Assembly: GCA_030704615.1 (NCBI GenBank)
Contig: CM060733.1
Coordinates: forward strand, 58,590,001-58,654,000
Length of the DNA: 64,000 bases
Source: Takakia lepidozioides
Taxonomy: Eukaryota; Plantae; Bryophyta
Direction: 5' to 3'
The notes beneath the pieces were generated by a model, which did no database searches, was not told where the DNA came from, and saw only the letters and a program-made list of their open reading frames with translations. Of this stretch, positions 5,140 to 29,576 are shown piece after piece. How positions within the stretch are numbered: position 1 is the first letter of the stretch; each line of letters begins with the position of its first letter. A program made the translations under genes and the position numbers.

Positions 5140-8100
5140 CACACCCCTACCAACAGGGAGTCGATGTCCTCATCGACTTGTCCATTTTGTAGAAACGAAC
5201 ATCCAAATTGTGGCGTCCCACATCAAGGAGTTTGTTTTCGTACCATGGCGTCCCATGGCAAAGAACAAACCCCCACTTGACTCTACTCTCCACTAGCTAG
5301 TTCAGGTCCCCGCCAAGGGTGGAGCTTCTCAAGCTCCTCCCAGTGCACTCTTCTTGGCCCACTTCAAGGCCAAGGAACGATCCTCCCCGAGGATCGAATC
5401 GCCTTACTGCAACAACATTGCTTGCAACCGCTCATGATGCCACTTTTGGCATCACCTTGAGCAAGGGTTCACTTTGAACCCCTTTTTGACTAGGAAGATA
5501 ACCTTGAACCAACCGTGCGCCCCAATCACTACAATTGGGTCCGCCTTGGAATGCTGGCCTGAGGTACGGGAAGACGCCGAAGCCGCATTACGACTTCGTC
5601 CCGAGGCTACACGATTATAGTACGTGAACGAAAGCACGTAGCTTCCGTGTTAGCCTGCACTACAAGGCAACCCCCTCGGTAGCGCAGTTATAGTACTTGC
5701 ACGCACCAGGTGCGCACTAGCACGTGAAATCCCAAAGAAGGCGCAAATTTCCTTGCCGCTTGGATGGGAGTCACCCGATTTCGGCACTACGCAAACACAC
5801 GATTAATCCAATTTACCTCTCCCACCTTTGTAAGCTAGCATGCATTCTACATACTAGCCGAACATACCATGCATCACCATTCCAAACAAAATAAGACGCA
5901 CAACATTTGGAAACCATTTCATTTATAACAAAATTTGTACAATACAAGTTTTTGCAATCGGATTCATGAGCTAGCTAAGCCGGGCTAAGCATGCATTTCC
6001 TCCCCGCGATCCCGGTTGATGTCCCCATCAACGCTTTTCCGAGGTCGCCCTTCGAAAGCTGCAACCGCCTCGGATGCGTTTCCCATTTCTGAGGCACGCA
6101 CCCAAGATGCCTCCACATGATGATAGCCCTTCCATTTTACGAGATACTCTGTTTCTCGATTCTTGAACCTCCTCGACTTAAGCACTGCCTCCACCTCGTA
6201 CTCAGGTTCATTTTCATGATCCAACAGCATAGGTGGCGGACGCAACACTTGATGCCGATTCGGACGCGCTTTATCTTTGAAGTAAGGCTTCAAAAGAGAG
6301 ACGTGGAATACCGGATGCACCTTGCTGTTTGCCGGCAGCTCCAATTCATATACATCCTCATTCATAACCTTCCAGATGCGAAAGGGTCCCGCATACGGAG
6401 GTACAAACTTCGGACTCACTTCCGGAGGTAGTTGGAAATTCTTGATGTTCAACCAGACCTCTATGCCTGCCTCAAACTTAACTTCCCTCCGCTTCCGATT
6501 CGCCTGCCATTCATACCGTTTCCTAGCTTTGGCAATGTTGTATTTTGCGAGCTTCAACAAACGCTCGCGATCTTCCAGCATCGCTGCTGCTGCGGGTTCC
6601 TCAACGTCTTGGGCGGCCCAACTTGTCGGCACCAAAGGTGCTTTTCCATAGACCAATACGAAAAGGGAAACTCCCGTTACGGAGTGTTTTGTGTTATTAT
6701 AACAGAACTCTGCCGCGTCCAAGTGCTCCACCCAGTCCGATTGGTGTGCCACCACGTAATTTCGCAAAATCTGCTTCACCACGAAATTCACCCTTTCCAT
6801 TTGGCCGTCCGTCGTAGGTCGGAAGGCAATGCTCATCTTGAGCCTCGTCCCCATTTTCTTCTAGAGTGCCCTCCAAAATTTACTTGTAAACTTTGGATCG
6901 CGGTTCAAGACAATATCCTTCGGGAGTCCATGATGCTTGAAGACGTGGGCGAAGTAAAGTCGCTCTGTCTCCTGTGCCGTTGCCGCCTCCTTGGTGGGAA
7001 TGAAATGGCCCATTTTACTGAATCTATCCACCACCACCATGATTGCATTGAATCATTTTGACAGCGGCATAGCAGTCATGAAATCCATCGAGACACTTTC
7101 CCAAAACCCCTCTGGAATCGGCAAGGGTTGTAACAGCCCCGCTTGCTTTTTGTACTCGCTCCGGTTTTGTTGGCATGTGGTGCATGTCTTGACATACTCC
7201 TTGGCCTCCTCCCTCAGTTTGGGCCCGAAATACTCTTTCTTTAGGAGTGCCGCGGTGCGCTTGGCTCCGCCATGGCCCGCAAGCGGGCCATCATGACATT
7301 CTCTCAAGAGAATATATCTGATCCCTTCCTTCGGCACATAGAGACGTTTTTGCTTGTACCGGAGCAGTCCATTTTGCAAGTGAAACTGCGATTTAACCCC
7401 CATCCTTAAGTCCCGCATCACAGACTTCGTCATCTCATCCTTCTGGTAAGCCTTCCAGATCTTTCTTTGGAGCGCCGTCTCACCTCTGTACACCAACATG
7501 AGCTGCTGCTTTCTATTTAAGGCATCGGCCACCACATTGTTCCGTCCCGGTTTGTACTGGATATCCACGTCAAACATTGCCAAAGTGTCTTGCCACCTGA
7601 GTTGTTTTGGGGACAACTTAGGCTGCGTGGCAAAATACTTCACCGTGACATTGTCCGTGAATACCTTCACCGGGTTGGAACCAACATAGTGGCACCAAAG
7701 CTCAAGGCAATGCACCACCGCCTTCATCTCTTTCTCGTGCGTTGGCCACCGTCGCTCCGCTTCATTCAGTTTCTTACTTTCGTAAGCCACTGAACGCCCC
7801 CAATCGCGAAGTCCGACGCATTTGTATGAATCTCAAACGGACGGTCGAACTCCGGGATTTTCAAGACTTGAGCTTCCGCCATCCGCTGCTTCAACTCGGC
7901 AAAGGCTTGGCCACAAAAGGTGTTCCATACCCATACCTTGGATTTACACAGAAGGTCTGACAGCGGCCCCACGATCTTGGCAAAATTTCTCACATACTTT
8001 CGGTAGCGAGTCCTAGGAAGGATCGCACTCCCGGGACCGAAGTTGGAGGCTCCCAGTCCAAGATTGCCCTTACCTTTCTGTCATCCATTTTGATCCTATC

Positions 8101-10175
8101 CTGTGTAATCACATGCCCCAGGAACTCCACTTTTGTGACCCCGAATTCGCACTTTGAAGCTTTGGCATACAGCTTCCCTTCTCGCAATTTTTGGAACACC
8201 CTTTTGAGGTGCTCCAGGTGCTCCTCTTTTGTTTTTGAGTACACCAAGATGTCGTCGATGTACACGATCACAAAGTCATCCAGCCACTTCTGGAAAAGGC
8301 TGTTCATCAGCGTGCTAAAGGTCGCGGGTGCGTTGGTGAGCCCAAAAGGCATCACCAAGAACTCATATGAACCATACCTTGTCCTGCATGCGGTCTTCTC
8401 CTGATCTCCTTCCGCCACTCGAATTTGATGATAGACGGAACGCAAATCAATCCGGCTGAAATACTTCGCTCCCGCCAACCGATCGAAAATGTCGTCGATC
8501 CTTGGCAAAGGGTACCAGTTTTTGATAGTCACCTTATTCAGAGCCCTGTAATTGACACACATCCGCAGCGTCCCATCCTTTTTGTCTGCGAATAGCACCG
8601 GGGCTCCGTAAGGTGACTTACTCGGCCGGATGTACCCCTTTGACATTAGATCCTTGAGCTGAGTCTTCAGCTCAACCAACTCTCTCTGGCTCAACCGGTA
8701 GGGCGCCTTGGCAGGCGGCTCCGATCCCGGTATCACCTTAATCTCGTGGTCAACTCCCCTTCGCAGTGGCAAGCCGCTTGGTAAATCCTCCGGCATCACA
8801 TCCTGGTATTTCTCCAAGATCCCCTTGATCCAATCTGGGCTCGGCTCCTTATCGCCCTCTCCCTTCACTTGTCTTACGTAAAGCAAAAACTGGGGCTCGT
8901 GTGGCTCCTCCATGGCCCACTCCCTTGCTGACAGAAGGTTTATTCGCCCTCCCACGGGTTTGGGCGTTTACGACACTCGTAAAACTTCGCCACCATTCCC
9001 ACGCGACAACGTGACTACTCTCTTGCGGCCATTTATGACCGCTCTGGATTTGCTCAAAAAAATCATCCCCAAAATGAGATCCACTCCATCGATCTCGCAA
9101 ATGGTGAAGTTCTCACGTCCCTCCCAACTCCCCAGTTGAAGAGGAACATTGAACGCCAATCTCGTCGCCAAATTGTGGTTCTCTTTTGGCAGAACACATT
9201 TCAATAGAGGCCTCCACGTCACTTGTCGAGAGCCCCAGCTTCGTGTCATTGCCGGTGTCATGAAGGAGTGCGACGCTCCTGTGTCCACCAACAACGACAC
9301 GTTAGTTCCGGAAATTATCCCATCCACGAACATTAACTAACTTCCTTCACGCAACTTGCCAGTTTCCTGATACAACTCACAAGAGTAGTTGCCTATCTTG
9401 CAAGTCTTGGTGACCACCGCCTCCACTAAGCGGCTGATTGAATCTTCGGACAACTCCGTGGCCGCCCGAGTCATGTTCAATTGTCGGGGTTTCGTGCACT
9501 TCTTGGCCATGTGCCTGGGCTCCCCGCAATTGAAGCACACTCCATCGAAGGTCGCCTTCTGTCCGCCATAAGCCGCCGCACCCGCTTTTCCTTTCGGAGC
9601 ACCGGGTGCCACCTTGACGTGTGAAGGCCCTCCCTTTGATTTCCACGTGCCATTGTCGCCGCGTGGCCTATCCCACTTCTTTTCCGGTCGGAAGGAGTCA
9701 CCCTCCCGCCGGGCCTTCTTGTGGTTCAGCTCCGTACGGCCTTGTCTTTTGCCCCTAGGGACATCCGAGAAACATTCAGCCCTCTCAATTGCCTCGTTCA
9801 AAGTCTTAGGTGGTTTCTCCTCCAACTTCCGCCTGGCCCATGGGGCCAGTCCCGCCAGAAAGTTGAAGACCATTTCTGGTTCTCTCATGTCCGCGACTTT
9901 GAGCAACATCACATTGAAAGCCTGAACATATTCCTGAATGTCATCCGTTTGCTTCAAATTCCTCATCTTGTCCCGGACGAGCCAGGACGTGTTGAGGGGC
10001 ACAAACTGTCTCTTCATAAGTTCTTTGAACCCACTCCAGTTCAAGGTTTCCAGTTTTGGACCTCGGTCGTGAAGGCGTTTCTGCCACCATTGTTGAGCAT
10101 AGCCCCTCAAATAGATCCTAAGAACATACAACTTGTGCATGACCTACTCAGCTTCATACCCCTTCTCCACCCATT
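4419..10175 (-). mobile_element. Ty3/Gypsy chromovirus LTR retrotransposon, 5'-truncated and frameshifted
   Basis: gag with CCHC knuckle CFNCGEPRHMAKKC (9337-10140); protease LVDTGASHSF (8968-9333); [11 protein letters not shown] (7990-8955); RNase H and integrase HHCC (7053-7993); integrase core, GPF motif and chromodomain YEVEAVL...YLVKWKGY (5985-6854). 3' LTR present; no 5' LTR or PBS. Confidence 0.95.
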
Positions 10176-17923: not shown

Positions 17924-19832
17924 GAGAGAGAAGATATACATGTCATGTCAAGACATGGACAAGACCACTAAAGTCATTGTCATTGAAAGACAAAGCAACC
18001 CTTTACAGGGCATCATCTAACAACCCCTTTTACCAACTCATTTGAACATCTTATAACTTTTCAGGGTATCTGAAAAAACAGGGTGGGAGGGCGGGATTCC
18101 TGGTCATTCATATCCTGAAAGCCCCATAAGTTGACATAAAGCATTCATTTTTTTGTTGTGACATGGGTCAAGCCTTACATAATCTAGTTCTTGAGCCATT
18201 CATCTTCCTAAAACAACATCCTGTGTAGGCGTGAAACTGATCTGTCAGTGCCAAGACACATGCAAGATTCATAAAGTAGAAGCGGGGCTAAGTTTTTATC
18301 AAGTATATGTAAGCCTGGATAATCATTCCAGGACTTCAAGATCAAAACTCTGCCATAGTATAAGGTAGGAAGCGCACAGCATCTACCAGCAAGCAGTTCT
18401 TGAAAACCAAAATACTGATGGGGTCAGGTCTGAAGGTGCTTCAGTGCCAAGTCATAAGCCAGATTTCTAACAAAACAAAACATAGGGCTGAGTACCCTTA
18501 AGTAGATATGGGCCTGAAGTGGTATTCCAGGGCCTCATAACAAGCTCTGCTAGTTAAAGAAATGAACTCAGAAACCATTGTCCCTATCATGCAATGAAAT
18601 AGTGGTGATATAAGAGCCTTGAAGAATGTTTGTTATCACAAGGTCTATCTTCTGATCCATCAGAGCCAGGCCATGGTGTTTCATTTCAGAGCTTAGTTTC
18701 CATGCTGCCAGAGCTATAGTCGCAGCCATGTACCTTTGTTAAAAACATCCAGAGCTTTCAACAGAGATTTTGTTTCTATGAAGTCCCTTGTGTGTCTTAA
18801 CTCCAAAATGTATAAAAGTGGTTATCAAGAACCAAAAACAGGGATAAGGAGTAAGAAGGTGATCCTCATTAGAGCAGACTTGAAGCCGATTTGAGGCAGC
18901 AAGATGGCAGATTTGAAAACAACAGTTGGTATCAGCAGCTTCAGGCGGTAACAGCAATCCCTTATGCATGAATCAGACTCTGCAAGCTTCAATAATTCAA
19001 GACAAGTGAAGACCCTCACCTGTGCCCGTCCCAAAAACCACCACATAGAGATGTGTGTTAGTGAGGATGCATCAGGTGAGTGGCAGGTTTTCACAGTTGC
19101 TATCCATGTCAGTGTTGAATTCCAAAGCATGTACAAATCGTAATCCAAGCAAGGGTACACTCAAAAGAAACCTTGAGCGTTTGCGGTATGCCCTGCGCCA
19201 TGGCGTCCAGTAGATGTCTCCAGCAGAACGCAATCAAAGTAGATAGAGATCAGCTCATACAGAAAGAGAGCAACATGTAATCTGTGGCTAAGTAGGGGTG
19301 GAGTACTTCCCAACGAGGAGTAAGAGCGCCGCTGCGAATTTAACAGAATCATAAATTTCTGAGCAGAGCGATCACTGCAATGTCGACTGCCAGAGAAGAA
19401 TCTGTCTATCTGCCATTGCGCATCCCAAAAGCCAGCCATCACGAGTACCATGTAGCCGCAAGGGAGCAGGTTTACACGGCGCATCATCAAGGATCATAGA
19501 AGCACGAGTTCAGTGCTGTGAAATATGTCGGCCCGTTTAGGGCACATCTTCCCGATTTTTCATCCAGGGTGGATGAAAAATCACATTTTTAAGAGATGCA
19601 CTTTGTTAATGGATGATATCCCATAAAAAGGTATCTTAGGGTTACGGTATAGGCTTAGGTTTAGTAACTGCCATCATTAATGATGGTACAGATTACTACC
19701 TCTTGGATTTTTAGAATAGGTCACCAGTATTCATGTATTTCATCCAGTTTAGATGAAAGAAGCAAATAGTAAATATCAGGGCCAAATGAAATCCAAAAAG
19801 TTATAGAGGGAGAGGGAGAGAGGGAGAGAGAG
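17924..19832 (-). repeat. 3' terminal direct repeat (pseudo-LTR)
   Basis: On +, runs GAGAGAGAAGATATAC...TTATAGAGGGAGAGGGAGAGAGGGAGAGAGAG. Matches 24065-25973 apart from about six single-base indels found by eye. Confidence 0.95.
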
Positions 19833-20096
19833 GGACCCACCAGCCAATCCCCTGGCATGGCATAACCTTACGGAATGAGTGTGGTATGCACTCACCCCGT
19901 AAGGGAGTGCATACCAGACCTCTTCTCATAAGGTTTCCCTCTTCCATGTAGTTCTATCATCGGATTATATTATCCAAGGGAGTAGAATCCTACATCCTCA
20001 TTTCCTCGGCTCATGAATGAAACATTAGTATAAAAATGTGACATAGCAAAACTAGTATAGTATTACTAGCAAAGAACATAGAGTTCAATGGTATAC

Positions 20097-22319
20097 TTAG
20101 CTCTGGATAGGTTTTTGGAAAATACCTTTCAGTTTCTCAATAAGCTCATGTACAGGGAAGAACAAGCCAGGGAATGAGCCTTGTTCAAGGAACCTTGTCA
20201 AGATACGAGCAAGTTTCCTGGTCTTAAAACCATTCCTCCCAAGAGTGTTAATCAGAATGCTGCATTCCTTCCAAGCCAAAACAGCATTGCTGGAAATGTA
20301 TAGAATAGGCACAGCTTGTGAAATCACAATGTTGTAGGATTGATTCACAGGCCTATTGGATAAGAACTGGATATATTGAGTGTAAGAGAAAGGAAGTAGT
20401 CTTCTCTTGTCATATTTCTGGAAATAGAACTCACCTGTGTCACTGTTTGAGACTGTAATCTGGATATTCATGAAACAAGCTTCCAACCCCACGTATTGGG
20501 AATCAGTTTTGGTACGTAGTAGCTCAGGTTTGATCTCCACTACATTGAGTGGGTAGATCCACCAAGGGTTGTTGCTGCTTCTGTCTGCCTTTGGGTCCAG
20601 GAACAGCATTGCATCACCCACATTCAGCCAGCATATATCATCAATGTATCTGAAGGCAGATTTAAACAAAGGCATGAGCTGGAATTGTCCCAAAGCTGCA
20701 AGCCTTAAGATGAATTTGATCTCGTAAGAAAGGAAGTACATGTTGCACCATAATGGTGAGCATGAAAAACCCATAGGTATTCCAGAAATCTGCTGCCACA
20801 CACGGTCCCCTAAGGCAACAAAACAGTGTGACATAAGCCATTTGTGGAGCATAAGTAACTTGGCTTCAGAAAGCTCAATCCAAGTACCTGATTTCGGGGA
20901 GGACGTGCCCCACCTACTTTTCCGGAAAGTACCGTTTTTGGCTGGAATCCATAGAGTATGACGTGCCCGGGGGTGAGACATATGGTGTTGTTGGAATGCA
21001 ATCTTCACCACGTATTCAATGGCGTCCCCTAGGTTATCCTGACCTGTCAAAGGTATGTTCTCATAGCATTGTGTAATGTCAGCCACAAAGATGTTATGGA
21101 CTTTTGCAGGCAGGTTTAGTGTAAAGTCAGTGATGGAATCAATAATCCAATACATAGCAGTAGATACTTTGAAAAATTGCTCATAAGTATCCAGCCTTGT
21201 TTTGGTCCATTCTTTTACCAATGGTAGAAGATCCATGGTAGCTCTTGTAAAGAGGCTAGCTAGTTCACTGAAAACACATTTGTGGGCATTGGTAATCCAT
21301 CTGTATTTTTTCTTATGTAGCTTGTAGATTCCCATAATGTAAGGTAGTCTACAGGAGGGAACAGGTATCTCCGGAATCAAACTCTGTATTTCCACGGAAA
21401 TGTTTCCTAGAACAAGGTCAGGTGGCAGCCATACCTCATCTTGCTTGCATGGTGTAAAGTCTTTACCCATCAATCTGTGGAATGCTTGGATTCTTACGTG
21501 CTTCACACACATAAAACATACATTGTTGTTAGCCTTGTCAAGACCAGAGAAATACAGGTGATTGAGAAGCCATGAAAGTTCGTCTTTTGCCTCTTTTACA
21601 GTAAGAGGATTGCGCTCATGGTGAGTGAAGTCATACCTTCTTCTGCCGGCTTTTTGTTTCAGTCTATCCCAGCATGTGTTTTTTACCCATTGGTTGCAGG
21701 TTGCAGCCCAAGATTCACATGGGTCTATATGCAAAATTTCACAGGTTCTGTGGAAAGCCAAAGACACTTGTTCAACAACGTCTTTTAGTAAAGTACGTTT
21801 GAGAGGGATGTGATTCATACCTAGGCTGAATAATTCTTTCAGCTTTGCGTGTTTAATAATGTTCAGGTCCATGGTACGTACGTGTTGCGTAGGTGTAGAA
21901 CCAGACAGATGGAATTCTGATTTTGTATCCACATCCCGAAAATCATGAAACCTCTTGGCACTGTCACATAGACAATCTGGTGAGTGAATCAAGTCTTGCA
22001 TAAAGCAAAAATCACGGAAAACAACAGCAGGCTGATAGTATTCAGAACTGCTTTGTTTATGATATGTCCATCCAAAAACTATCTCATCGATGAGAATAGC
22101 TAAGTCATTTTGCCCAAATTCCAGAAAGGCTTCTTTTATCAGGTTCTTAGGGTGTATCCACTCCATACCACGGTTTGGGTATAACATATGAATGAATCCC
22201 AAAGGAGCAGGTTTTGCTGCCTGTTTTATGAATTTCCTGCCATGGGCATGAGTTTCAATTTGTTTGCAACCATCCTCAAAGACATATAACGCATCTGCAC
22301 ATACAAAGTAGAGGAACAT
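20097..22319 (-). CDS. Penelope-like reverse transcriptase (Naiad/Chlamys-type), 740 aa, no GIY-YIG domain
   Basis: CLC...HVRTMDLNII, DKANNNVCFMC, LPYIMGIYKLHK, ADITQCYENIP (motif A), QISGIPMGFSCSPLWCNMYFLSYE (B), FRYIDD (C), YDKR..PF...SNRP (PLE thumb). The ORF ends shortly after the thumb. Confidence 0.9.
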   Translation of the reverse strand: MFLYFVCADALYVFEDGCKQIETHAHGRKFIKQAAKPAPLGFIHMLYPNRGMEWIHPKNLIKEAFLEFGQNDLAILIDEIVFGWTYHKQSSSEYYQPAVVFRDFCFMQDLIHSPDCLCDSAKRFHDFRDVDTKSEFHLSGSTPTQHVRTMDLNIIKHAKLKELFSLGMNHIPLKRTLLKDVVEQVSLAFHRTCEILHIDPCESWAATCNQWVKNTCWDRLKQKAGRRRYDFTHHERNPLTVKEAKDELSWLLNHLYFSGLDKANNNVCFMCVKHVRIQAFHRLMGKDFTPCKQDEVWLPPDLVLGNISVEIQSLIPEIPVPSCRLPYIMGIYKLHKKKYRWITNAHKCVFSELASLFTRATMDLLPLVKEWTKTRLDTYEQFFKVSTAMYWIIDSITDFTLNLPAKVHNIFVADITQCYENIPLTGQDNLGDAIEYVVKIAFQQHHMSHPRARHTLWIPAKNGTFRKSRWGTSSPKSGTWIELSEAKLLMLHKWLMSHCFVALGDRVWQQISGIPMGFSCSPLWCNMYFLSYEIKFILRLAALGQFQLMPLFKSAFRYIDDICWLNVGDAMLFLDPKADRSSNNPWWIYPLNVVEIKPELLRTKTDSQYVGLEACFMNIQITVSNSDTGEFYFQKYDKRRLLPFSYTQYIQFLSNRPVNQSYNIVISQAVPILYISSNAVLAWKECSILINTLGRNGFKTRKLARILTRFLEQGSFPGLFFPVHELIEKLKGIFQKPIQS

Positions 22320-22336
22320 ACCAAAAAATGAGATTT

Positions 22337-23815
22337 TTACAGATCATTCCAAGATCCAAAGTCTCGTTTGTGTATTGGGGAGAACTCGTCAGTGATACGA
22401 CGAGTCTTGTATGACTCCTGGCTGGCGATGTTGATGGTGGTACTGGAATTAGCACCCGAACCCCCAGTTGAGGACCGATTCGTTGCTCTTGAATTCTCAG
22501 AGGTGTTGGTAGAGTAATGTCCCCTGCCAGAGCGTCCTCCTCTTTGGTAGAGACCTCTTCCACGACCAGGGGTACCTCTTCCCCGGGCAGTGCTGCTCTT
22601 GCCTTGTTGAGGAGGCATCTGCCCCTCCATACGCTGCCGTTTGTAGCTATTGAATTGTGGCCTGGGAAGGCTGTCTGAAAAAGACCCAGGTTTCACGAGT
22701 TTCTCAATGTATCTGGCCCCCTTGGATTCTCCTAACTTCGCAAGCAGCTTGGCTTGTGGGTCATTTGAGAATTCACAGGCTGCTTCCATTATGAACCCTC
22801 GGGTCATCTGGAAAGTAATTTGTGCCAGTACAGCAGATCTGGCAGCCCGCATGATCCATACCAGAAAATTGTAATACTTGGTTTGCACCGAAGGATAGGT
22901 ATCATCAGGGAAGAACACAATCAGATTGTTCAGCATATACCAAACCATATGGTCAAACCAAGCAACACTCCCAATGCAAGAAGAAGGTGCCCCTCCTTGT
23001 CCACAGTTGCATCTTATGTAAGGACGATGCCAATTGAAGAGTTGACTCTTATGGTTCTTGGATCTGGCTGATCCAGTCGGCAAATCATTTTTGGTCCTCA
23101 AGGTAAGGTTCTCACCTTTGTCATAGAGCTTGTAGTAGAAGGTCCTTAGTGGCCACGCCACGGCAATAGGTTCCTTTTTTATTCTCTGAAGACCCTCCTT
23201 AGCATCCTGTGCACATCTACTGCGTTCAGCAGGAGTTATGTTGCCCCATTTGACCCACATTTCAATGGAAATGGGTGCCAATAGGTTGATATTAGCATGT
23301 GGATGCCACATCATATGATCGTTATTGGCAACCTCTAATTCAACTGCACGGGGAGGCAACCAAGGGACAAATTGCAGATTTCCAGGAGTGGCACCTGCTG
23401 CTCTTTCTTGTTCCACTTGTGAGAGTTCTACTTGTTCACAGAATTCTCTCACTGCCTCTTTTTCTTCATCCGGTAAAATTATGTGCCCAAGGATTGGGTG
23501 ATTACTTACAGAAGGGATGAAGTCTTTTTCAGAGGTGTTTGCAGATTTCTGCGTGGAGACAGTCTGGTCATCGTCCGGGTTCGCCATTCTAAGAGCAGCC
23601 TCAATGGCTGATCCCTTCTTTTCCCATTGTATCAGCTCCTCGGCATCATCTTCCAGTACCTCAATCATTTTAGTATTGAACTCCTGGAGCTTCTCCAGGT
23701 ACCTGCCATTCTTATTTGCCATGATGCCAAGTGCAACCCAATTTTCCAAAGCCAAAGTCTCAAGTAGTAATACGGGATTTTCATCACCTGAATTTTCCAA
23801 GGCCTCAGTGTCCAT
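22337..23815 (-). CDS. ORF1 of the Penelope-like element, unknown protein (>=492 aa) with RG/RGG-rich C-terminus
   Basis: Long intact ORF ending 17 nt before the RT ATG. Acidic helical N-terminus, Trp/Cys/His-containing core, RGRGTPGRGRGLYQRGGRSGRG tail. The frame stays open upstream to a splice-acceptor-like site at 23957. Confidence 0.8.
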   Translation of the reverse strand: MDTEALENSGDENPVLLLETLALENWVALGIMANKNGRYLEKLQEFNTKMIEVLEDDAEELIQWEKKGSAIEAALRMANPDDDQTVSTQKSANTSEKDFIPSVSNHPILGHIILPDEEKEAVREFCEQVELSQVEQERAAGATPGNLQFVPWLPPRAVELEVANNDHMMWHPHANINLLAPISIEMWVKWGNITPAERSRCAQDAKEGLQRIKKEPIAVAWPLRTFYYKLYDKGENLTLRTKNDLPTGSARSKNHKSQLFNWHRPYIRCNCGQGGAPSSCIGSVAWFDHMVWYMLNNLIVFFPDDTYPSVQTKYYNFLVWIMRAARSAVLAQITFQMTRGFIMEAACEFSNDPQAKLLAKLGESKGARYIEKLVKPGSFSDSLPRPQFNSYKRQRMEGQMPPQQGKSSTARGRGTPGRGRGLYQRGGRSGRGHYSTNTSENSRATNRSSTGGSGANSSTTINIASQESYKTRRITDEFSPIHKRDFGSWNDL

Positions 23816-24064
23816 CTTTTGTAATGTAGCATGGAAGTCACTTGGTGTGACTTGTGTGAGGGTTGCTTGTACAGCAGGAATTGGAGGAGGTAGAGGGGAC
23901 TGATACCCCAGAGCTACGAGGTCCTCATTCCATCTAGGGTCTCCTTTGGTGACCTTCTGTCAAAGTCCCCCCGAAAAAACTTGTCAGTGCATCATAATGA
24001 GAAGGTGAAAAGGAGATGGGTAGATGATGTGTACAAATACCACTAAGTACATTGGTCAAATAAA

Positions 24065-25973
24065 GAGAGAGAAGATATACATGTCATGTCAAGACATGGA
24101 CAAGACCACTAAAGTCATTGTCATTGAAAGACAAAGCAACCCTTTACAGGGCATCATCTAACAACCCCTTTTACCAACTCATTTGAACATCTTATAACTT
24201 TTCAGGGTATCTGAAAAAACAGGGTGGGAGGGCGGGATTCCTGGTCATTCATATCCTGAAAGCCCCATAAGTTGACATAAAGCATTCATTTTTTGTTGTT
24301 GACATGGGTCAAGCCTTACATAATCTAGTTCTTGAGCCATTCATCTTCCTAAAACAACATCCTGTGTAGGCGTGAAACTGATCTGTCAGTGCCAAGACAC
24401 ATGCAAGATTCATAAAGTAGAAGCGGGGCTAAGTTTTTATCAAGTATATGTAAGCCTGGATAATCATTCCAGGACTTCAAGATCAAAACTCTGCCATAGT
24501 ATAAGGTAGGAAGCGCACAGCATCTACCAGCAAGCAGTTCTTGAAAACCAAAATACTGATGGGGTCAGGTCTGAAGGTGCTTCAGTGCCAAGTCATAAGC
24601 CAGATTTCTAACAAAACAAAACATAGGGCTGAGTACCCTTAAGTAGATATGGGCCTGAAGTGGTATTCCAGGGCCTCATAACAAGCTCTGCTAGTTAAAG
24701 AAATGAACTCAGAAACCATTGTCCCCTATCATGCAATGAAATAGTGGTGATATAAGAGCCTTGAAGAATGTTTGTTATCACAAGGTCTATCTTCTGATCC
24801 ATCAGAGCCAGGCCATGGTGTTTCATTTCAGAGCTTAGTTTCCATGCTGCCAGAGCTATAGTCGCAGCCATGTACCTTTGTTAAAAACATCCAGAGCTTT
24901 CAACAGAGATTTTGTTTTCTATGAAGTCCCTTGTGTGTCTTAACTCCAAAATGTATAAAAGTGGTTATCAAGAACCAAAAACAGGGATAAGGAGTAAGAA
25001 GGTGATCCTCATTAGAGCAGACTTGAAGCCGATTTGAGGCAGCAAGATGGCAGATTTGAAACAACAGTTGGTATCAGCAGCTTCAGGCGGTAACAGCAAT
25101 CCCTTATGCATGAATCAGACTCTGCAAGCTTCAATAATTCAAGACAAGTGAAGACCCTCACCTGTGCCCGTCCAAAAACCACCACATAGAGATGTGTGTT
25201 AGTGAGGATGCATCAGGTGAGTGGCAGGTTTTCACAGTTGCTATCCATGTCAGTGTTGAATTCCAAAGCATGTACAAATCGTAATCCAAGCAAGGGTACA
25301 CTCAAAAGAAACCTTGAGCGTTTGCGGTATGCCCTGCGCCATGGCGTCCAGTAGATGTCTCCAGCAGAACGCAATCAAAGTAGATAGAGATCAGCTCATA
25401 CAGAAAGAGAGCAACATGTAATCTGTGGCTAAGTAGGGGTGGAGTACTTCCCAACGAGGAGTAAGAGCGCCGCTGCGAATTTAACAGAATCATAAATTTC
25501 TGAGCAGAGCGATCACTGCAATGTCGACTGCCAGAGAAGAATCTGTCTATCTGCCATTGCGCATCCCAAAAGCCAGCCATCACGAGTACCATGTAGCCGC
25601 AAGGGAGCAGGTTTACACGGCGCATCATCAAGGATCATAGAAGCACGAGTTCAGTGCTGTGAAATATGTCGGCCCGTTTAGGGCACATCTTCCCGATTTT
25701 TCATCCAGGGTGGATGAAAAATCACATTTTTAAGAGATGCACTTTGTTAATGGATGATATCCCATAAAAAGGTATCTTAGGGTTACGGTATAGGCTTAGG
25801 TTTAGTAACTGCCATCATTAATGATGGTACAGATTACTACCTCTTGGATTTTTAGAATAGGTCACCAGTATTCATGTATTTCATCCAGTTTAGATGAAAG
25901 AAGCAAATAGTAAATATCAGGGCCAAATGAAATCCAAAAAGTTATAGAGGGAGAGGGAGAGAGGGAGAGAGAG
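24065..25973 (-). repeat. 5' terminal direct repeat (pseudo-LTR)
   Basis: Near-identical to 17924-19832; followed by extra AGAGAG. Confidence 0.95.
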
Positions 25974-27607
25974 AGAGAGCCACTTCACCTTAAGGCTACT
26001 ACCCCCTTTGGAGGGTGGGCCCTAAAACAGTTGCACGCACTCTTACACGCCATATCACTTGTCACACACTCTAAATTAGAAGTACAATTTTATATGTGGT
26101 TTTCGTTTCCTAGGTTGAATATATTTGGTACCAGGGTTTAGTGTGCTGTAAGTGTATGCATGTTTGTAATTTTGGCCAAACTCGGTCGAAGGTTGCCCTA
26201 ACACACGTCACTCCTAGAGACCACCCGCCATGCCTGCTTACCCCAATCTAACCATGAACCATCCCCTATTTAATAGGTCTTACTTTCCTCCCTTTTTCCC
26301 CCCAACTTACATGATAGTTATTAATTGAACTCCTGCTGTAGCTTACTATAACTCCCGCTTCATAATTCCTGGACCACTCTCTAATCCCCACACCCACTTT
26401 CAAACCTGGCCCCCTTATTGATAAAGCCCTAGTATAATATAAAAATTAATTACCATTATAGAGGTAATTTAGAGAATCTGAACCTCACAAACCATTAACA
26501 TAGCTATCCCATGGGCTTAAGGGGGGGGGGGATGGTAGCAAACACCCATGATGGCAGCATACCATGGGCGCCTGGCACACGTCAATGAGTGAGGCATCCA
26601 ATTTTTTTGAATTTTCTCTCCAATTGTGACTATTAAATAAATAAATAAATAACAAATTGTGATGTCTTGGGTGCAAAAGTTGAAGGTGAAAAAAAAAAGA
26701 GAAAAAAGTTGAACTTGCCAACTTCACTTCACTTCACTTCAACTTGTCAAGTTAATCTTACATTTTGCCTTCTCACCAACCACACCGTCCACGACATACG
26801 TACATACGGCAGACATGAACATCACGAGATCGCTGCTTTCAGCATATGACCCTCCCACATCATCACTTTTTACTTCCCTTTTGGATGCGTTGCTTTCCAA
26901 GGAGCCACACTTGTGGGCCCACAAACCGCCAAACATGTGAATGACTAGTTTTTTAGTCACAATTTTGAGTTGGCTGTTGCTCCCAACGCACGAATGCATG
27001 GACCACATGACCCACATTCCGGGGAGCAGATTTAGGGAGGCACACCACTGTGTCTGCGTCACCAATCTGGCATGGCTCCCTCTACCAATAATGTAAACCC
27101 GGCCCAAAAAAGCTTTGTTTTTATTGGATTCGTCTTGTAGAAGATCTAGTGCGTGCCACAAGGGTCATGTGAGCTTGTATTGTCCATTGAAAACGTGTAC
27201 AAAATGTCTGGATGTTGTTGAAGCATAGAGTGAGAATCGAGATCAATCATCAGAAATCTGCAACCGAAGTGGTACTTACTGTATGGAGGCAGTAACAATT
27301 TGGGTGTGAGGTGGGTGAATGCCTGCATGATTGTCCATAAGTATTGCCGGCAACTTTTCGTCCATGGATTCTGTGTCTCGGGGGCCCACCTCGCAAGCGG
27401 TGTGATGACTCGCACGGAAAGGAGAAATAGTATATATAAAAAGTGGTCTACAAACCTGGGCACCACACGCACAGGCTGGCAAACTTTATGAGCTTTGTAA
27501 GGACTTGCCAGGGACATCGGCAAGTGGGTGGTATCCGGTGAGAGAGACGAATTTTAGAGATCAGACTTGAACAGGTTGCCTGCAAACAAGCGGAAAGCTG
27601 AGAGGTC

Positions 27608-29576
27608 ATGGCGAAGACGATGCGAGCTGTGCAATATTCGAAGTATGGCGGAGGGCCTGCAGGTCTTGAGGCACGCATCTCTCTTTCTCATCGACCGGCT
27701 TGCGCTAACCCCATTTGTTTTTTGCGGTGCAAGTTGGGTCGTATGCCTCTAGCGTGTAAGAAATCAAGGATATGGCTATTGTTAGTCAAACGGCAGTCCA
27801 TACTTCGCATCTGGAATTTTGTATCTGACTTGAGATGCTGCTGCGGGATCGTTCTTTGACTGTGGCTGCAGTATGTGGACATACCAGTGCCGACTCCGAA
27901 AAAGGGGGAGATGTTGGTTAGGGTAGAGGCTACGAGTGTCAATCCGGTTGACTGGAGAATTCAGCAAGGCCTGCTCTTGAAGCACATTCTGCCTCGCAAG
28001 TTTCCTACTATCCCAGGTAATTTGTCACACACTCTGTAGTTCAGCTTTGCTTCCAAATTTTGTTGTTATGAGGGAATGTGTTCCTGTCTCTATTTAAGTA
28101 ATCAGTGCTTCATGCCCAGATGTTTCTTACATATTTCACACAACTGCCAGGCACGGATGTTGCGGGCGAGGTGGTTGCATTGGGCCCTGAAGTGGAAGGA
28201 TTCAGCCCTGGTGACAAAATCATTTCCAACTTGGCCGTCGCGGTAAGCCTCTCTCTTTGTACATCTTTGTATGGATACGAATGCGTCTCAGAATCAGATC
28301 GATCATTCAAAACAATTTTCTTAGCACTTGTACCTAGATCCCGTGATTTCCTTGAAGGAAAGCTCTAAGCTGCCTCGACAACACGAAGGTTGTCATCCCA
28401 CGGGCCAAGCGACTGTGGAGGTCTTTCTGTGGTTGACAAGGTAAGGAAAAGCTTTCAATGCACATTGTACAAACGTATTAAGAGTTCTGGTTTGGGTTTT
28501 GAGATGTCTATACCGCTGCTCTGGAAGTGACCACCGTAGGTACTAGCAGTTTAGTGGAAAATGGTTGACCAGTCGCCCTAGCTCACAACTGGTTTGCTCA
28601 CGTGACTCGTTTGCTGGTACAAAATGCTGCAAACCTTTTCACCATGTGTAGTTTCTATGAGAGTTTTTGACCTGGGGGATGCAAGCAGACGCAAGGAGCG
28701 CTAGCCGAATACACGATTGTGCCCGCCGACTTGACAGTGAAACGTCCACCGAATTTGTCAGCAGTGGATGGTGCTTCCCTGCCTGTTACTGGTTTGACAG
28801 CGTTGCAAAGCATTAAACTCGTAGGCATCAAATTGGATGGAAGCTCACATCTCAATGTGCTTGTAACAGCAGCATCTGGTGGTGTTGGAATACTTTTAGT
28901 CCAGGTTGGACCTCTCTCTCTCTCTCTTTCTTTCACGCACACAACCCCTTCCACGCCACCTTCCCTCCATTCCTAGCTGTTTCGAGTGAGTGGTAATGCA
29001 CGAAAGAATTATGAGTAGGTGCCCACTTGAGTATCGCCTTCATTTCACTGTGAAATGCGCACAGGCCTCATTGCCTCGATGTCGTGGGAGTCTATTGTGC
29101 AGATTGCCAAACTAGGAGGTTGCTTTGTGACCGCCACATGCGGAGCCCGCAACATTGAGCTGGTTAAGGGCCTGGGAGCTGATGAAGTGCTGGATTACAA
29201 CACCCCTGAAGGTGCCCAGTATAAGAGTCCTTCGGGAAAGAAATACGACGTGGTCTTTCACCTGGCAACATATCAAACCCTGGCTGCCTTCCAGCCCCAA
29301 CTTTCTTCCCATGCAACAGTGATTGACATGACGCCAACATTTAGGACCTTCATAGAAAACTACTACCACAGGATCACATTTAAAACCCAAAAGTTTCTAC
29401 CGTTTATAATGTCACCTGCCCTTGCAGATCTGCAGGTAATTGTAGAGCTTGCTGGAGAAGGGAAGCTGAGAATTGTTGTGGACTCCACATATCCGTTAGC
29501 GAAGGCAGGAGATGCTTGGGAACGCAACATTGGAAGGCACGCAACTGGGAAGGTTGTGATTATCTGCACTGAGTAG
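27608..29576 (+). CDS. ceQORH: NADPH:quinone/alkenal oxidoreductase, MDR family (chloroplast envelope quinone oxidoreductase homolog), 5 exons
   Basis: Exons 27608-27670, 27872-28016, 28151-28242, 28689-28904 and 29103-29576 join in frame: QYSKYGGG, SVNPVDW, TDVAGEVV, LPVTGLTALQ, TAASGGVG, TATCGARNIELVKGLGADEVLDY.TPEG..KSPSGKKYD, HATGK. Confidence 0.93.

What the first reader, a model, noticed from the sequence alone, without database searches (positions are those of the whole stretch)
17924..25973. Young two-ORF Penelope-like retroelement with 1.9-kb terminal repeats and no recognisable nuclease
Seen: repeat(1909 bp)-ORF1-RT-3'UTR-repeat(1909 bp), both ORFs intact, repeats differing only by about six 1-nt indels. 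Known: the RT motifs (CxC..HVxTxD, DKAxNN, GIPMG, FRYIDD, YDKR..F..SN) are those of Naiad/Chlamys-type PLEs, which normally carry a GIY-YIG endonuclease C- or N-terminal to the RT, while described endonuclease-less PLEs (Athena, Coprina) are telomere-associated. Here I find no GIY-YIG, RNase H, integrase or tyrosine recombinase motif, the site is interstitial (1.6 kb from a host gene), and the repeats lack TG..CA ends. Inference: an undescribed nuclease-free PLE lineage with LTR-like architecture and its own gag-like partner, which moved recently.
Basis: partly seen in the sequence, partly recalled or inferred. Interest (0 to 1): 0.92.

Follow-up and report, generated by a model that had tools for sequence, protein, structure and literature searches.

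The report
Young endonuclease-less plant Penelope-like retroelement (PLE-X)
This is a real, very young and apparently intact jumping gene of the Penelope-like kind in a land-plant genome, but it belongs to a nuclease-free group (PLE-X) already described in stoneworts and spike mosses, so it is a useful new member and not a new kind of element.

Summary
On the minus strand, two 1909-bp direct repeats (17924-19832 and 24065-25973) differ by no substitutions, only six 1-nt run-length differences. They flank a 492-aa ORF1, a 740-aa RT ORF and a 264-nt 3'UTR.

"Undescribed lineage" is not supported.
- The RT has the CxC, DKA, GIPMG and FRYIDD motifs of the Naiad/Chlamys clade.
- Its nearest named relatives are Selaginella moellendorffii and Chara braunii proteins. 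These are the taxa in which Craig et al. 2021 (PMC8557442) described the nuclease-free "PLE-X" families.
- ORF1 carries the PLE-X N-terminal CxC-X8-C motif and aligns to the N-terminal parts of those proteins.
- The "LTR-like" repeats are ordinary Penelope pseudo-LTRs. The insertion lies in a (CT)n microsatellite.

No nuclease was found. Pfam and a GIY-YIG motif scan were negative, and a confident model of the ORF1 core matches no solved fold.

Differences from published PLE-X:
- ORF1 is a separate ORF, and RT restarts 17-21 nt after its stop in six elements.
- No hammerhead ribozyme was detected.
- A conserved structured 3'UTR RNA abuts an internal (CT)n.

An earlier follow-up in this scan (s1-476341) filed a sister copy on the same piece of this genome as PLE-X. 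RNA and long-read checks could not be run.

The parts
24065..25973 (-). Upstream pseudo-LTR (repeat copy 1), 1909 bp. On the element strand it begins with an imperfect (CT)n run and ends in TCTTCTCTCTC.
25946..25979 (.). GA/CT microsatellite spanning the 5' junction. It runs 6 nt beyond the repeat into the flank, so the target was a (CT)n tract.
   Evidence: TRF; sequence.
23816..24064 (-). 5' leader between the repeat and the ORF1 ATG. Positions 23956-23816 encode, in the ORF1 frame and with no ATG, the conserved block W-N-E-D-L..GY..PLPPP.P..QAT found at the N-termini of homologues. A candidate 84-nt intron is unproven: ATG 24052-24050, donor GT 24040-24039, CTGAC 23987-23983, acceptor AG 23958-23957.
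22337..23815 (-). ORF1, 492 aa. It has N-terminal long helices (37-78, 116-141), a confidently modelled alpha/beta core (about 175-385) with C269-x-C271-X8-C280 and W-F-D288-H289, and a disordered RGG-rich tail (about 396-492).
22320..22336 (-). 17-nt spacer between the ORF1 stop (TAA 22339-22337) and the RT ATG (22319). The RT frame opens only at 22343, so the overlap is 4 nt and a -1 frameshift site cannot fit.
20097..22319 (-). RT ORF, 740 aa. Motifs: CxC (C116, C118), H146-V-x-T-x-D, D261-K-A263, RT motif A D414, GIPMG 513-517, FRYIDD 556-561, then the thumb. No endonuclease domain.
19833..20096 (-). 3'UTR. Positions 19834-19925 form a conserved structured RNA (three nested helices) that ends directly at the internal (CT)n.
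17924..19832 (-). Downstream pseudo-LTR (repeat copy 2). Positions 19832-19805 are the internal imperfect (CT)n. The copy ends in TCTTCTCTCTC against the flank CATACAAC.

Best explanation
This is a recently inserted, probably autonomous member of the endonuclease-less PLE-X group of Penelope-like retroelements (Chlamys side of the Naiad/Chlamys clade) in a bryophyte-type land-plant genome.

Structure:
- The repeat unit is 6141 bp.
- The 1.9-kb "terminal repeats" are pseudo-LTRs, made when the RT jumped templates during one insertion and produced a partial tandem.

Likely mechanism (inferred):
- The upstream pseudo-LTR drives transcription.
- ORF1 (helical N-terminus, zinc-binding core, RGG tail) coats or chaperones the RNA.
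- The RT is translated by restart about 20 nt after the ORF1 stop.
- The RT binds the structured 3'UTR.
- With no nuclease of its own, the CT-rich RNA end anneals to a free 3'-OH in a (GA/CT)n microsatellite, at a break or replication gap, and primes reverse transcription there.

Shown here: the architecture, the homology, the absence of any detectable nuclease, and the CT-rich junctions.
For: RT homology:
- 1858 hits at E<=0.001.
- The named ones among the best 150 that I looked up are all Selaginella moellendorffii (EFJ12422.1, E 5e-87) or Chara braunii.
- The quick ML tree puts the window RT in a 100%-supported 11-row clade beside the group holding the Selaginella and Chara rows.

ORF1:
- It aligns to the N-terminal parts of those same RT-bearing proteins.
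- It carries CxC-X8-C; C269 and C280 are invariant and C271 is conserved in at least 90% of sequences. This is the PLE-X hallmark in PMC8557442.

Architecture in relatives:
- The repeat-ORF1-RT-repeat layout recurs in independent contigs L001 and L002.
- ORF1 followed by RT recurs in L002-L008, L014 and L019.

No nuclease:
- Pfam gives only a weak RVT_1 match.
- No GIY..YIG motif occurs in either ORF or in 224 fetched relatives.
- tblastx finds no conserved coding in the repeats.
- The ORF1 core model (pLDDT 80.5) matches no solved fold: Foldseek E>=1, best Z 3.6, Atlas TM<=0.37.

CT-rich junctions.
Against: - No hammerhead ribozyme was found here or in seven relatives, whereas published PLE-X families have canonical ones.
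- No EN+ Chlamys or Naiad reference sequences could be obtained, so the tree has no outgroup and PLE-X monophyly was not tested.
- ORF1 is a separate ORF here, not an intron-joined extension.
- The unit boundaries are ambiguous by circular permutation. The 3' end could be the repeat end or the internal (CT)n.
Confidence: 0.82

Rival explanations
1. ORF1's zinc-binding core is itself a nuclease or DNA-end-processing enzyme of an undescribed fold. It would supply the missing endonuclease, so the element is not nuclease-free.
For: The core is conserved from Chara to land plants and is always linked to this RT. It folds confidently but matches nothing solved. Near-invariant polar residues exist: E159, K230, N261, R264 and D288.
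Against: - The invariant residues are Cys and Trp, and C-x-C-X8-C followed by D-H looks like a metal-binding structural site, not a catalytic triad.
- There are weak hints to GRF-type zinc ribbons, which are DNA binders.
- No PD-(D/E)xK, HNH, GIY-YIG or RNase H pattern was seen.
- The only nuclease row in the Atlas search has TM 0.37/0.24.
Confidence: 0.08
2. This copy is a deletion derivative of an EN+ Chlamys element and is mobilised in trans by nuclease-bearing relatives.
For: EN loss by frameshift is common in Naiads. Craig et al. suggest secondary EN loss for PLE-X.
Against: - The EN-less ORF1+RT layout is shared by more than 10 independent elements at only 43-49% RT identity.
- No GIY-YIG motif occurs in any of the 224 fetched proteins.
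- Earlier notes on this genome list several EN-less copies, and none of those listed describes an EN+ one.

Any loss is therefore ancient and clade-wide, not specific to this copy.
Confidence: 0.04
3. The second 1.9-kb repeat is an assembly duplication, and the true locus has one copy.
For: The two copies have zero substitutions and differ only in homopolymer lengths, as polishing noise would give. Short-read relatives L014 and L019 assemble as unit-length, permuted contigs.
Against: The same repeat-body-repeat layout occurs in two independent assemblies of related elements (L001, L002). Each repeat copy has its own distinct unique junction. Pseudo-LTRs are the expected PLE structure.
Confidence: 0.05

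Closest known systems
PLE-X families (EN-minus subgroup of Chlamys; e.g. PLE-X1_sTam) of Chara braunii and Selaginella, Craig et al. 2021, PMC8557442
   Same: - The RT has the CxC motif and DKA, with a long spacing between RT motifs A and B.
- No GIY-YIG.
- An upstream protein part carries CxCX1-8C and is homologous to the N-termini of the Selaginella and Chara gene models.
- Pseudo-LTRs are present.
- The location is interstitial, as in Chara.
   Different: - ORF1 is a stand-alone ORF ending 17 nt before the RT ATG, not an intron-joined extension.
- No canonical hammerhead was detected.
- The target is a (CT)n microsatellite, not 28S rDNA.
- The host is a bryophyte-type land plant. The paper reports only BlastP hits in mosses.
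Chlamys and Naiad (N-terminal EN+ PLEs)
   Same: CxC linker motif, DKA, GIPMG and FRYIDD RT motifs, lack of canonical hammerhead, microsatellite insertion bias, pseudo-LTRs.
   Different: No N-terminal GIY-YIG endonuclease. An unrelated ORF1 sits in its place.
Athena and Coprina (EN-minus, telomere-attached PLEs)
   Same: No endonuclease. Extra upstream ORF with coiled-coil-like helices. The simple-repeat RNA end presumably anneals to a matching DNA 3' end.
   Different: Not at a telomere: no telomeric repeats occur in 64 kb. The repeat used is (CT)n. The RT is of the CxC Naiad/Chlamys type.
LINE-1 ORF1p/ORF2p bicistronic arrangement
   Same: A two-ORF retroelement in which the second ORF (RT) starts shortly after the first ORF's stop. 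ORF1 has helical, folded and basic parts, like a nucleic-acid chaperone.
   Different: No sequence or fold relation. No APE or REL endonuclease. This is an analogy only.

Membership tests
Penelope-like elements (PLE) | RT with the DKG/DKA motif upstream of RT1, the PLE-type RT4(B) GIPMG and RT5(C) FRYIDD motifs, and a thumb. | tested here: met
   Read in the translation. A263, G513, G517, D560 and D561 are invariant, and D261 and K262 are conserved in at least 90% of sequences, in the 16-sequence alignment A5.
Penelope-like elements (PLE) | Partial tandem insertion giving pseudo-LTRs. | tested here: met
   1909-bp direct repeats with a 6141-bp unit. The same layout occurs in L001 and L002.
Penelope-like elements (PLE) | Hammerhead ribozyme in the pseudo-LTR (canonical clades). 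| tested here: not met
   Rfam at gathering and at E<=10 gave no hammerhead. There is no CUGANGA..GAAA pattern, and none was found in seven relatives. Naiad and most Chlamys also lack it.
Naiad/Chlamys clade | CxC (zf-CDGSH-like) motif N-terminal to the RT. | tested here: met
   C116-L-C118, both invariant in A5.
Naiad/Chlamys clade | Insertion-in-fingers domain between RT3(A) and RT4(B). | tested here: inconclusive
   D414 to G513 is about 99 residues, which is long. No canonical-PLE reference was available for comparison.
Naiad/Chlamys clade | N-terminal GIY-YIG endonuclease. | tested here: not met
   No Pfam hit, no motif, and no nuclease fold in ORF1.
PLE-X (EN-minus Chlamys subgroup) | N-terminal extension with a conserved CxCX1-8C motif. 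| tested here: met
   ORF1 has C269-N-C271-X8-C280. It aligns to the N-termini of Selaginella P0030 and Chara P0039, P0052, P0142 and P0150.
PLE-X (EN-minus Chlamys subgroup) | Extension joined to the RT across an intron. | not testable with these tools
   Here there is a stop followed by a 17-nt spacer. Relatives show all three relative frames with a constant 17-21 nt spacer. No RNA data were available.
PLE-X (EN-minus Chlamys subgroup) | RT groups with the Chara and Selaginella PLE-X families. | tested here: inconclusive
   The nearest named relatives are only Chara and Selaginella. The quick tree places the window clade beside them with SH-aLRT 82. There is no EN+ outgroup.
PLE-X (EN-minus Chlamys subgroup) | Canonical hammerhead ribozyme. 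| tested here: not met
Athena/Coprina telomeric EN-minus PLEs | Attachment to telomeric repeats. | tested here: not met
   No (TTTAGGG)n or (TTAGGG)n in the window. The flanks are unique sequence plus (CT)n.
LTR / DIRS retrotransposons | RNase H plus integrase or tyrosine recombinase; TG..CA LTR ends. | tested here: not met
   Pfam was negative for both ORFs. The repeat ends are CT-rich.

The most novel reading that the evidence does not exclude
The conserved ORF1 core is a new fold that recognises or processes DNA 3' ends at (CT)n tracts. It may be a GRF-like zinc ribbon grafted on an undescribed alpha/beta domain. Together with the structured 3'UTR that abuts an internal (CT)n, it would give this telomerase-related RT a telomerase-like way of aligning template to primer at interstitial microsatellites. 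That would answer the open question of how EN-minus PLEs integrate inside chromosomes.
Probability: 0.12. Interest if true: 0.78.

Novelty: new member of a known kind. Interest (0 to 1): 0.36.

Why it matters
Craig et al. 2021 left open how PLE-X elements insert genome-wide without an identified endonuclease. This copy has zero substitutions between its pseudo-LTRs, open ORFs and clean CT-microsatellite junctions. With its ORF1 and 3'UTR RNA now defined, it is a practical substrate for testing that question by expression, RNA-end mapping, and ORF1 and RT biochemistry. It also extends PLE-X firmly into bryophyte-type land plants. In this sub-clade the extension has become a separate, restart-coupled ORF1.

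Tried and rejected
- Rfam at gathering and at E<=10, plus a manual hammerhead core pattern, found nothing relevant.
- The full-length ORF1 model matched only generic coiled coils. The core-only model had no match in PDB by Foldseek or VIA-align, and none in the ESM Atlas. The feature search and a profile search against PDB sequences gave only chance-level rows.
- The RT against PDB sequences gave no hit at E<=1.
- A profile search meant to reach named EN+ Chlamys or Naiad proteins returned only the same unnamed metagenome set, so no outgroup tree was made.
- The paper's supplementary reference sequences are not held.
- A -1 frameshift fusing ORF1 to the RT was rejected for this copy: the two frames overlap by only 4 nt. 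It was rejected for the clade because the ORF1/RT frame offset differs between relatives while the spacer stays 17-21 nt.
- Splicing from the ORF1 stop-overlapping GT to nearby AGs was considered. Only a 104-nt candidate keeps the frame, and the donor is not conserved in relatives. It remains unproven.
- The metagenome pattern scan for the 3'UTR motif returned 17 loci, of which 3 were true relatives.
- The covariance model of the 3'UTR RNA found no extra copy in the window.
Full report
**Observation**

The repeat search and BLASTN confirm two direct copies of 1909 bp at 17924-19832 and 24065-25973. Identity is 99.69% over 1912 columns, with 0 mismatches and 6 gap openings. A base-by-base alignment shows that every difference is a length change in a short run. 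There is therefore no substitution divergence at all, and the indels may be long-read consensus noise.

The coding strand is the minus strand:
- ORF1 23815..22337, 492 aa.
- RT ORF 22319..20097, 740 aa.
- 3'UTR of 264 nt.

The unit length is 6141 bp. No other copy of the element or of either protein lies in the window. No telomeric repeats occur in the 64 kb. Neighbours are a Ty3/gypsy chromovirus (5985-10140) and a zinc-dehydrogenase exon at 29055-29576.

**Junctions**

Read on the element strand, the upstream flank ends in (CT)n. This runs straight into an imperfect CT tract that opens the repeat. The same 28-nt imperfect tract opens the downstream copy at 19832-19805. Both copies end in TCTTCTCTCTC, followed by the element body in one case and by the flank CATACAAC in the other. 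No target-site duplication can be read, and there are no TG..CA ends.

Relatives behave alike:
- L002 has repeats of at least 1255 bp, probably about 1.85 kb, that end in GCTCTCT.
- In L001 the upstream repeat starts inside about 390 nt of (CTT)n.
- L006 starts with (CT)6 about 2.4 kb before ORF1.

This is the partial-tandem pseudo-LTR structure and microsatellite bias that Craig et al. 2021 describe for PLEs in general and for Naiad/Chlamys in particular (PMC8557442).

**What the RT is**

Pfam sees only a sub-threshold RVT_1 match. An exhaustive HMMER search finds 1858 relatives at E<=0.001. Every protein I looked up that carried a name is from Selaginella moellendorffii (EFJ12422.1, 967 aa, E 5e-87) or Chara braunii.

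Alignment A5 shows invariant C116, C118 (CxC), H146, A263 of the DKA motif (D261 and K262 are conserved in at least 90% of sequences), G513/G517 (GIPMG) and D560/D561 (FRYIDD). A quick ML tree places the window RT in a fully supported clade of 11 unnamed metagenome elements. That clade sits next to the group holding the Selaginella and Chara rows, with SH-aLRT 82.

I could not obtain EN+ Chlamys or Naiad or canonical PLE references. The tree is therefore unrooted in the sense that matters, and clade membership rests on nearest named relatives plus diagnostic motifs.

**What ORF1 is**

ORF1 has 17 homologues at E<=1e-25, mostly unnamed, with one from a liverwort assembly. It also aligns to the N-terminal parts of the same Selaginella and Chara proteins whose C-terminal parts are the RT. 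In one relative (P0087) the ORF1 C-terminal half and the RT N-terminus lie in one continuous protein.

C269, C280, W286 and W292 are invariant, and C271 and D288 are nearly so. C269-N-C271-X8-C280 is the "CxCX1-8C" motif that Craig et al. give as the mark of the PLE-X N-terminal extension. ORF1 is therefore not a new partner gene. It is the PLE-X extension, here as a separate reading frame.

**Search for a nuclease**

- No GIY..YIG-type motif occurs in either ORF or in any of 224 fetched relatives.
- tblastx between this element and four relatives finds no conserved coding in the repeats or UTRs, only the 3'UTR RNA.
- The window's repeat has no nucleotide similarity to the relatives' repeats.
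- The full ORF1 model (pLDDT 60.5) has long N-terminal helices, a confident core and a disordered RGG-rich tail. It matches only coiled coils.
- The core modelled alone (residues 175-385, pLDDT 80.5, pTM 0.82) has no Foldseek hit at E<1, a best VIA-align Z of 3.6, and Atlas TM<=0.37.
- The only recurring hint is a GRF-type zinc ribbon: the top Atlas row, and weak Pfam Zn_ribbon_GRF_2 matches in 2 of 23 family members.

The conserved residues look like a Cys3-His/Asp metal site plus a hydrophobic core, not a catalytic centre. I read ORF1 as a multimerising, zinc-binding nucleic-acid partner. This is an inference. A novel-fold nuclease is not excluded.

**ORF1-RT junction**

In the window the RT frame opens 4 nt before the ORF1 stop, so a -1 frameshift site cannot fit. 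The same layout appears in six elements (window, L002, L005, L006, L014, L019):
- ORF1 ends in a conserved peptide and TAA.
- A spacer of 17-21 nt follows. In the five relatives, though not in the window copy, it contains TCTGAC.
- The RT frame then begins at ATG or CTG, followed by the nearly invariant GTATGT(A/G)CAGAT.

The frame offset between the two ORFs takes all three values, which excludes readthrough and programmed frameshifting as a shared mechanism. Termination-coupled restart fits best. A 3' splice site (branch-like CTGAC about 20 nt before CAG) is the alternative. I built and searched no joined exon model.

ORF1's conserved N-terminal block lies upstream of the first ATG in the window copy and in L006 and L019. 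A candidate 84-nt intron that would supply an ATG is noted under the parts list but is unproven.

**3'UTR RNA**

A stretch of about 92 nt at 19834-19925 is the only non-coding part conserved with relatives whose RTs are 43-49% identical.
- The 125-nt stretch around it (19826-19950) folds at -62.8 kcal/mol, z -5.95.
- The consensus has three nested helices, with 6-8 pairs changed on both sides.
- It always ends directly at the internal microsatellite: (CT)n, or (CTT)n in L001.
- It is not a hammerhead or any Rfam family.
- A covariance model finds no second copy in the window.

**Mechanism**

The junctions fit priming of reverse transcription by a (GA)n DNA 3' end annealed to a CT-rich RNA end. 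A template jump would then create the partial upstream copy, and microhomology would join it at the target (CT)n. Whether the break is made by a host process, by another element's nuclease or by ORF1 is unknown.

The unit is circularly ambiguous. The 1.9-kb repeat may be its 3' part (the classical pseudo-LTR model) or its 5' part, with the structured RNA plus (CT)n as the true 3' end.

**Novelty**

The class is known (PLE-X, Craig et al. 2021). The only other paper in the held library that uses the name merely takes the Craig et al. PLE-X sequences as reference data. An earlier follow-up in this scan reached the same class for a sister copy on the same piece of this genome (s1-476341).

New details here:
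- The separate, restart-coupled ORF1.
- The absence of a hammerhead.
- The (CT)n-linked 3'UTR RNA.
- A confident but unmatched fold for the ORF1 core.

**Limits**

- No RNA or long-read evidence was available.
- No reference-set phylogeny could be made.
- Covariation rests on eight sequences, six of them close to one another.

Noticed in passing
window 19834-19925 (-); L002:5643-5732, L005:6975-7069, L006:6741-6835, L014:1150-1239(-), L017:3435-3524, L019:5231-5324(-): A conserved structured RNA of about 92 nt (three nested helices, some compensatory changes) ends exactly at the element's internal (CT)n. It matches no Rfam family. It may be the RT recognition or primer-alignment element.
   Followed up: partly
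window 22295-22343 (-); L002:3113-3150, L005:4418-4456, L006:4166-4206: The spacer between the ORF1 stop and the RT start is a constant 17-21 nt. It carries TCTGAC (in the five relatives, not in the window copy) and then a near-invariant (A/C)TG GTATGT(A/G)CAGAT, while the ORF1/RT frame offset varies. This points to a restart signal or a 3' splice site, not a frameshift.
   Followed up: partly
window 23816-24052 (-): ORF1's conserved N-terminal block has no in-frame ATG. A candidate 4-codon first exon (ATG 24052) and an 84-nt intron (GT 24040 .. CTGAC .. AG 23957) would restore a start in frame. L006 and L019 also lack an ATG there, whereas L002 and L014 have one.
   Followed up: partly
window 5985-10140 (-): A Ty3/gypsy chromovirus split into several ORFs, carrying gag, zf-CCHC, RVT_1, RNase H, integrase zinc finger, SH3 and chromodomain. 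The region is GC-richer (about 0.48-0.51) than the rest of the window.
   Followed up: partly
L002:9000-9230: The metagenome contig that carries a related PLE also has a short ORF with a Replitron_HUH Pfam hit. This suggests the contig comes from a plant or algal genome rich in other transposons.
   Followed up: no
L014 (6731 bp) and L019 (6749 bp): These short-read contigs of related elements are about unit length. L019 is circularly permuted, with the RT split across the contig ends. This is as expected if assemblers collapse the pseudo-LTRs or tandem copies.
   Followed up: no
L002:6317-6555 and 7470-7601, with matches in L005, L006, L014, L019: Within the pseudo-LTRs of the closer relatives, only two islands are conserved at 67-88% identity: about 240 nt, and the last 130 nt or so before the element body. 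They are possible promoter or leader elements. The window's repeat shares neither at BLASTN level.
   Followed up: no
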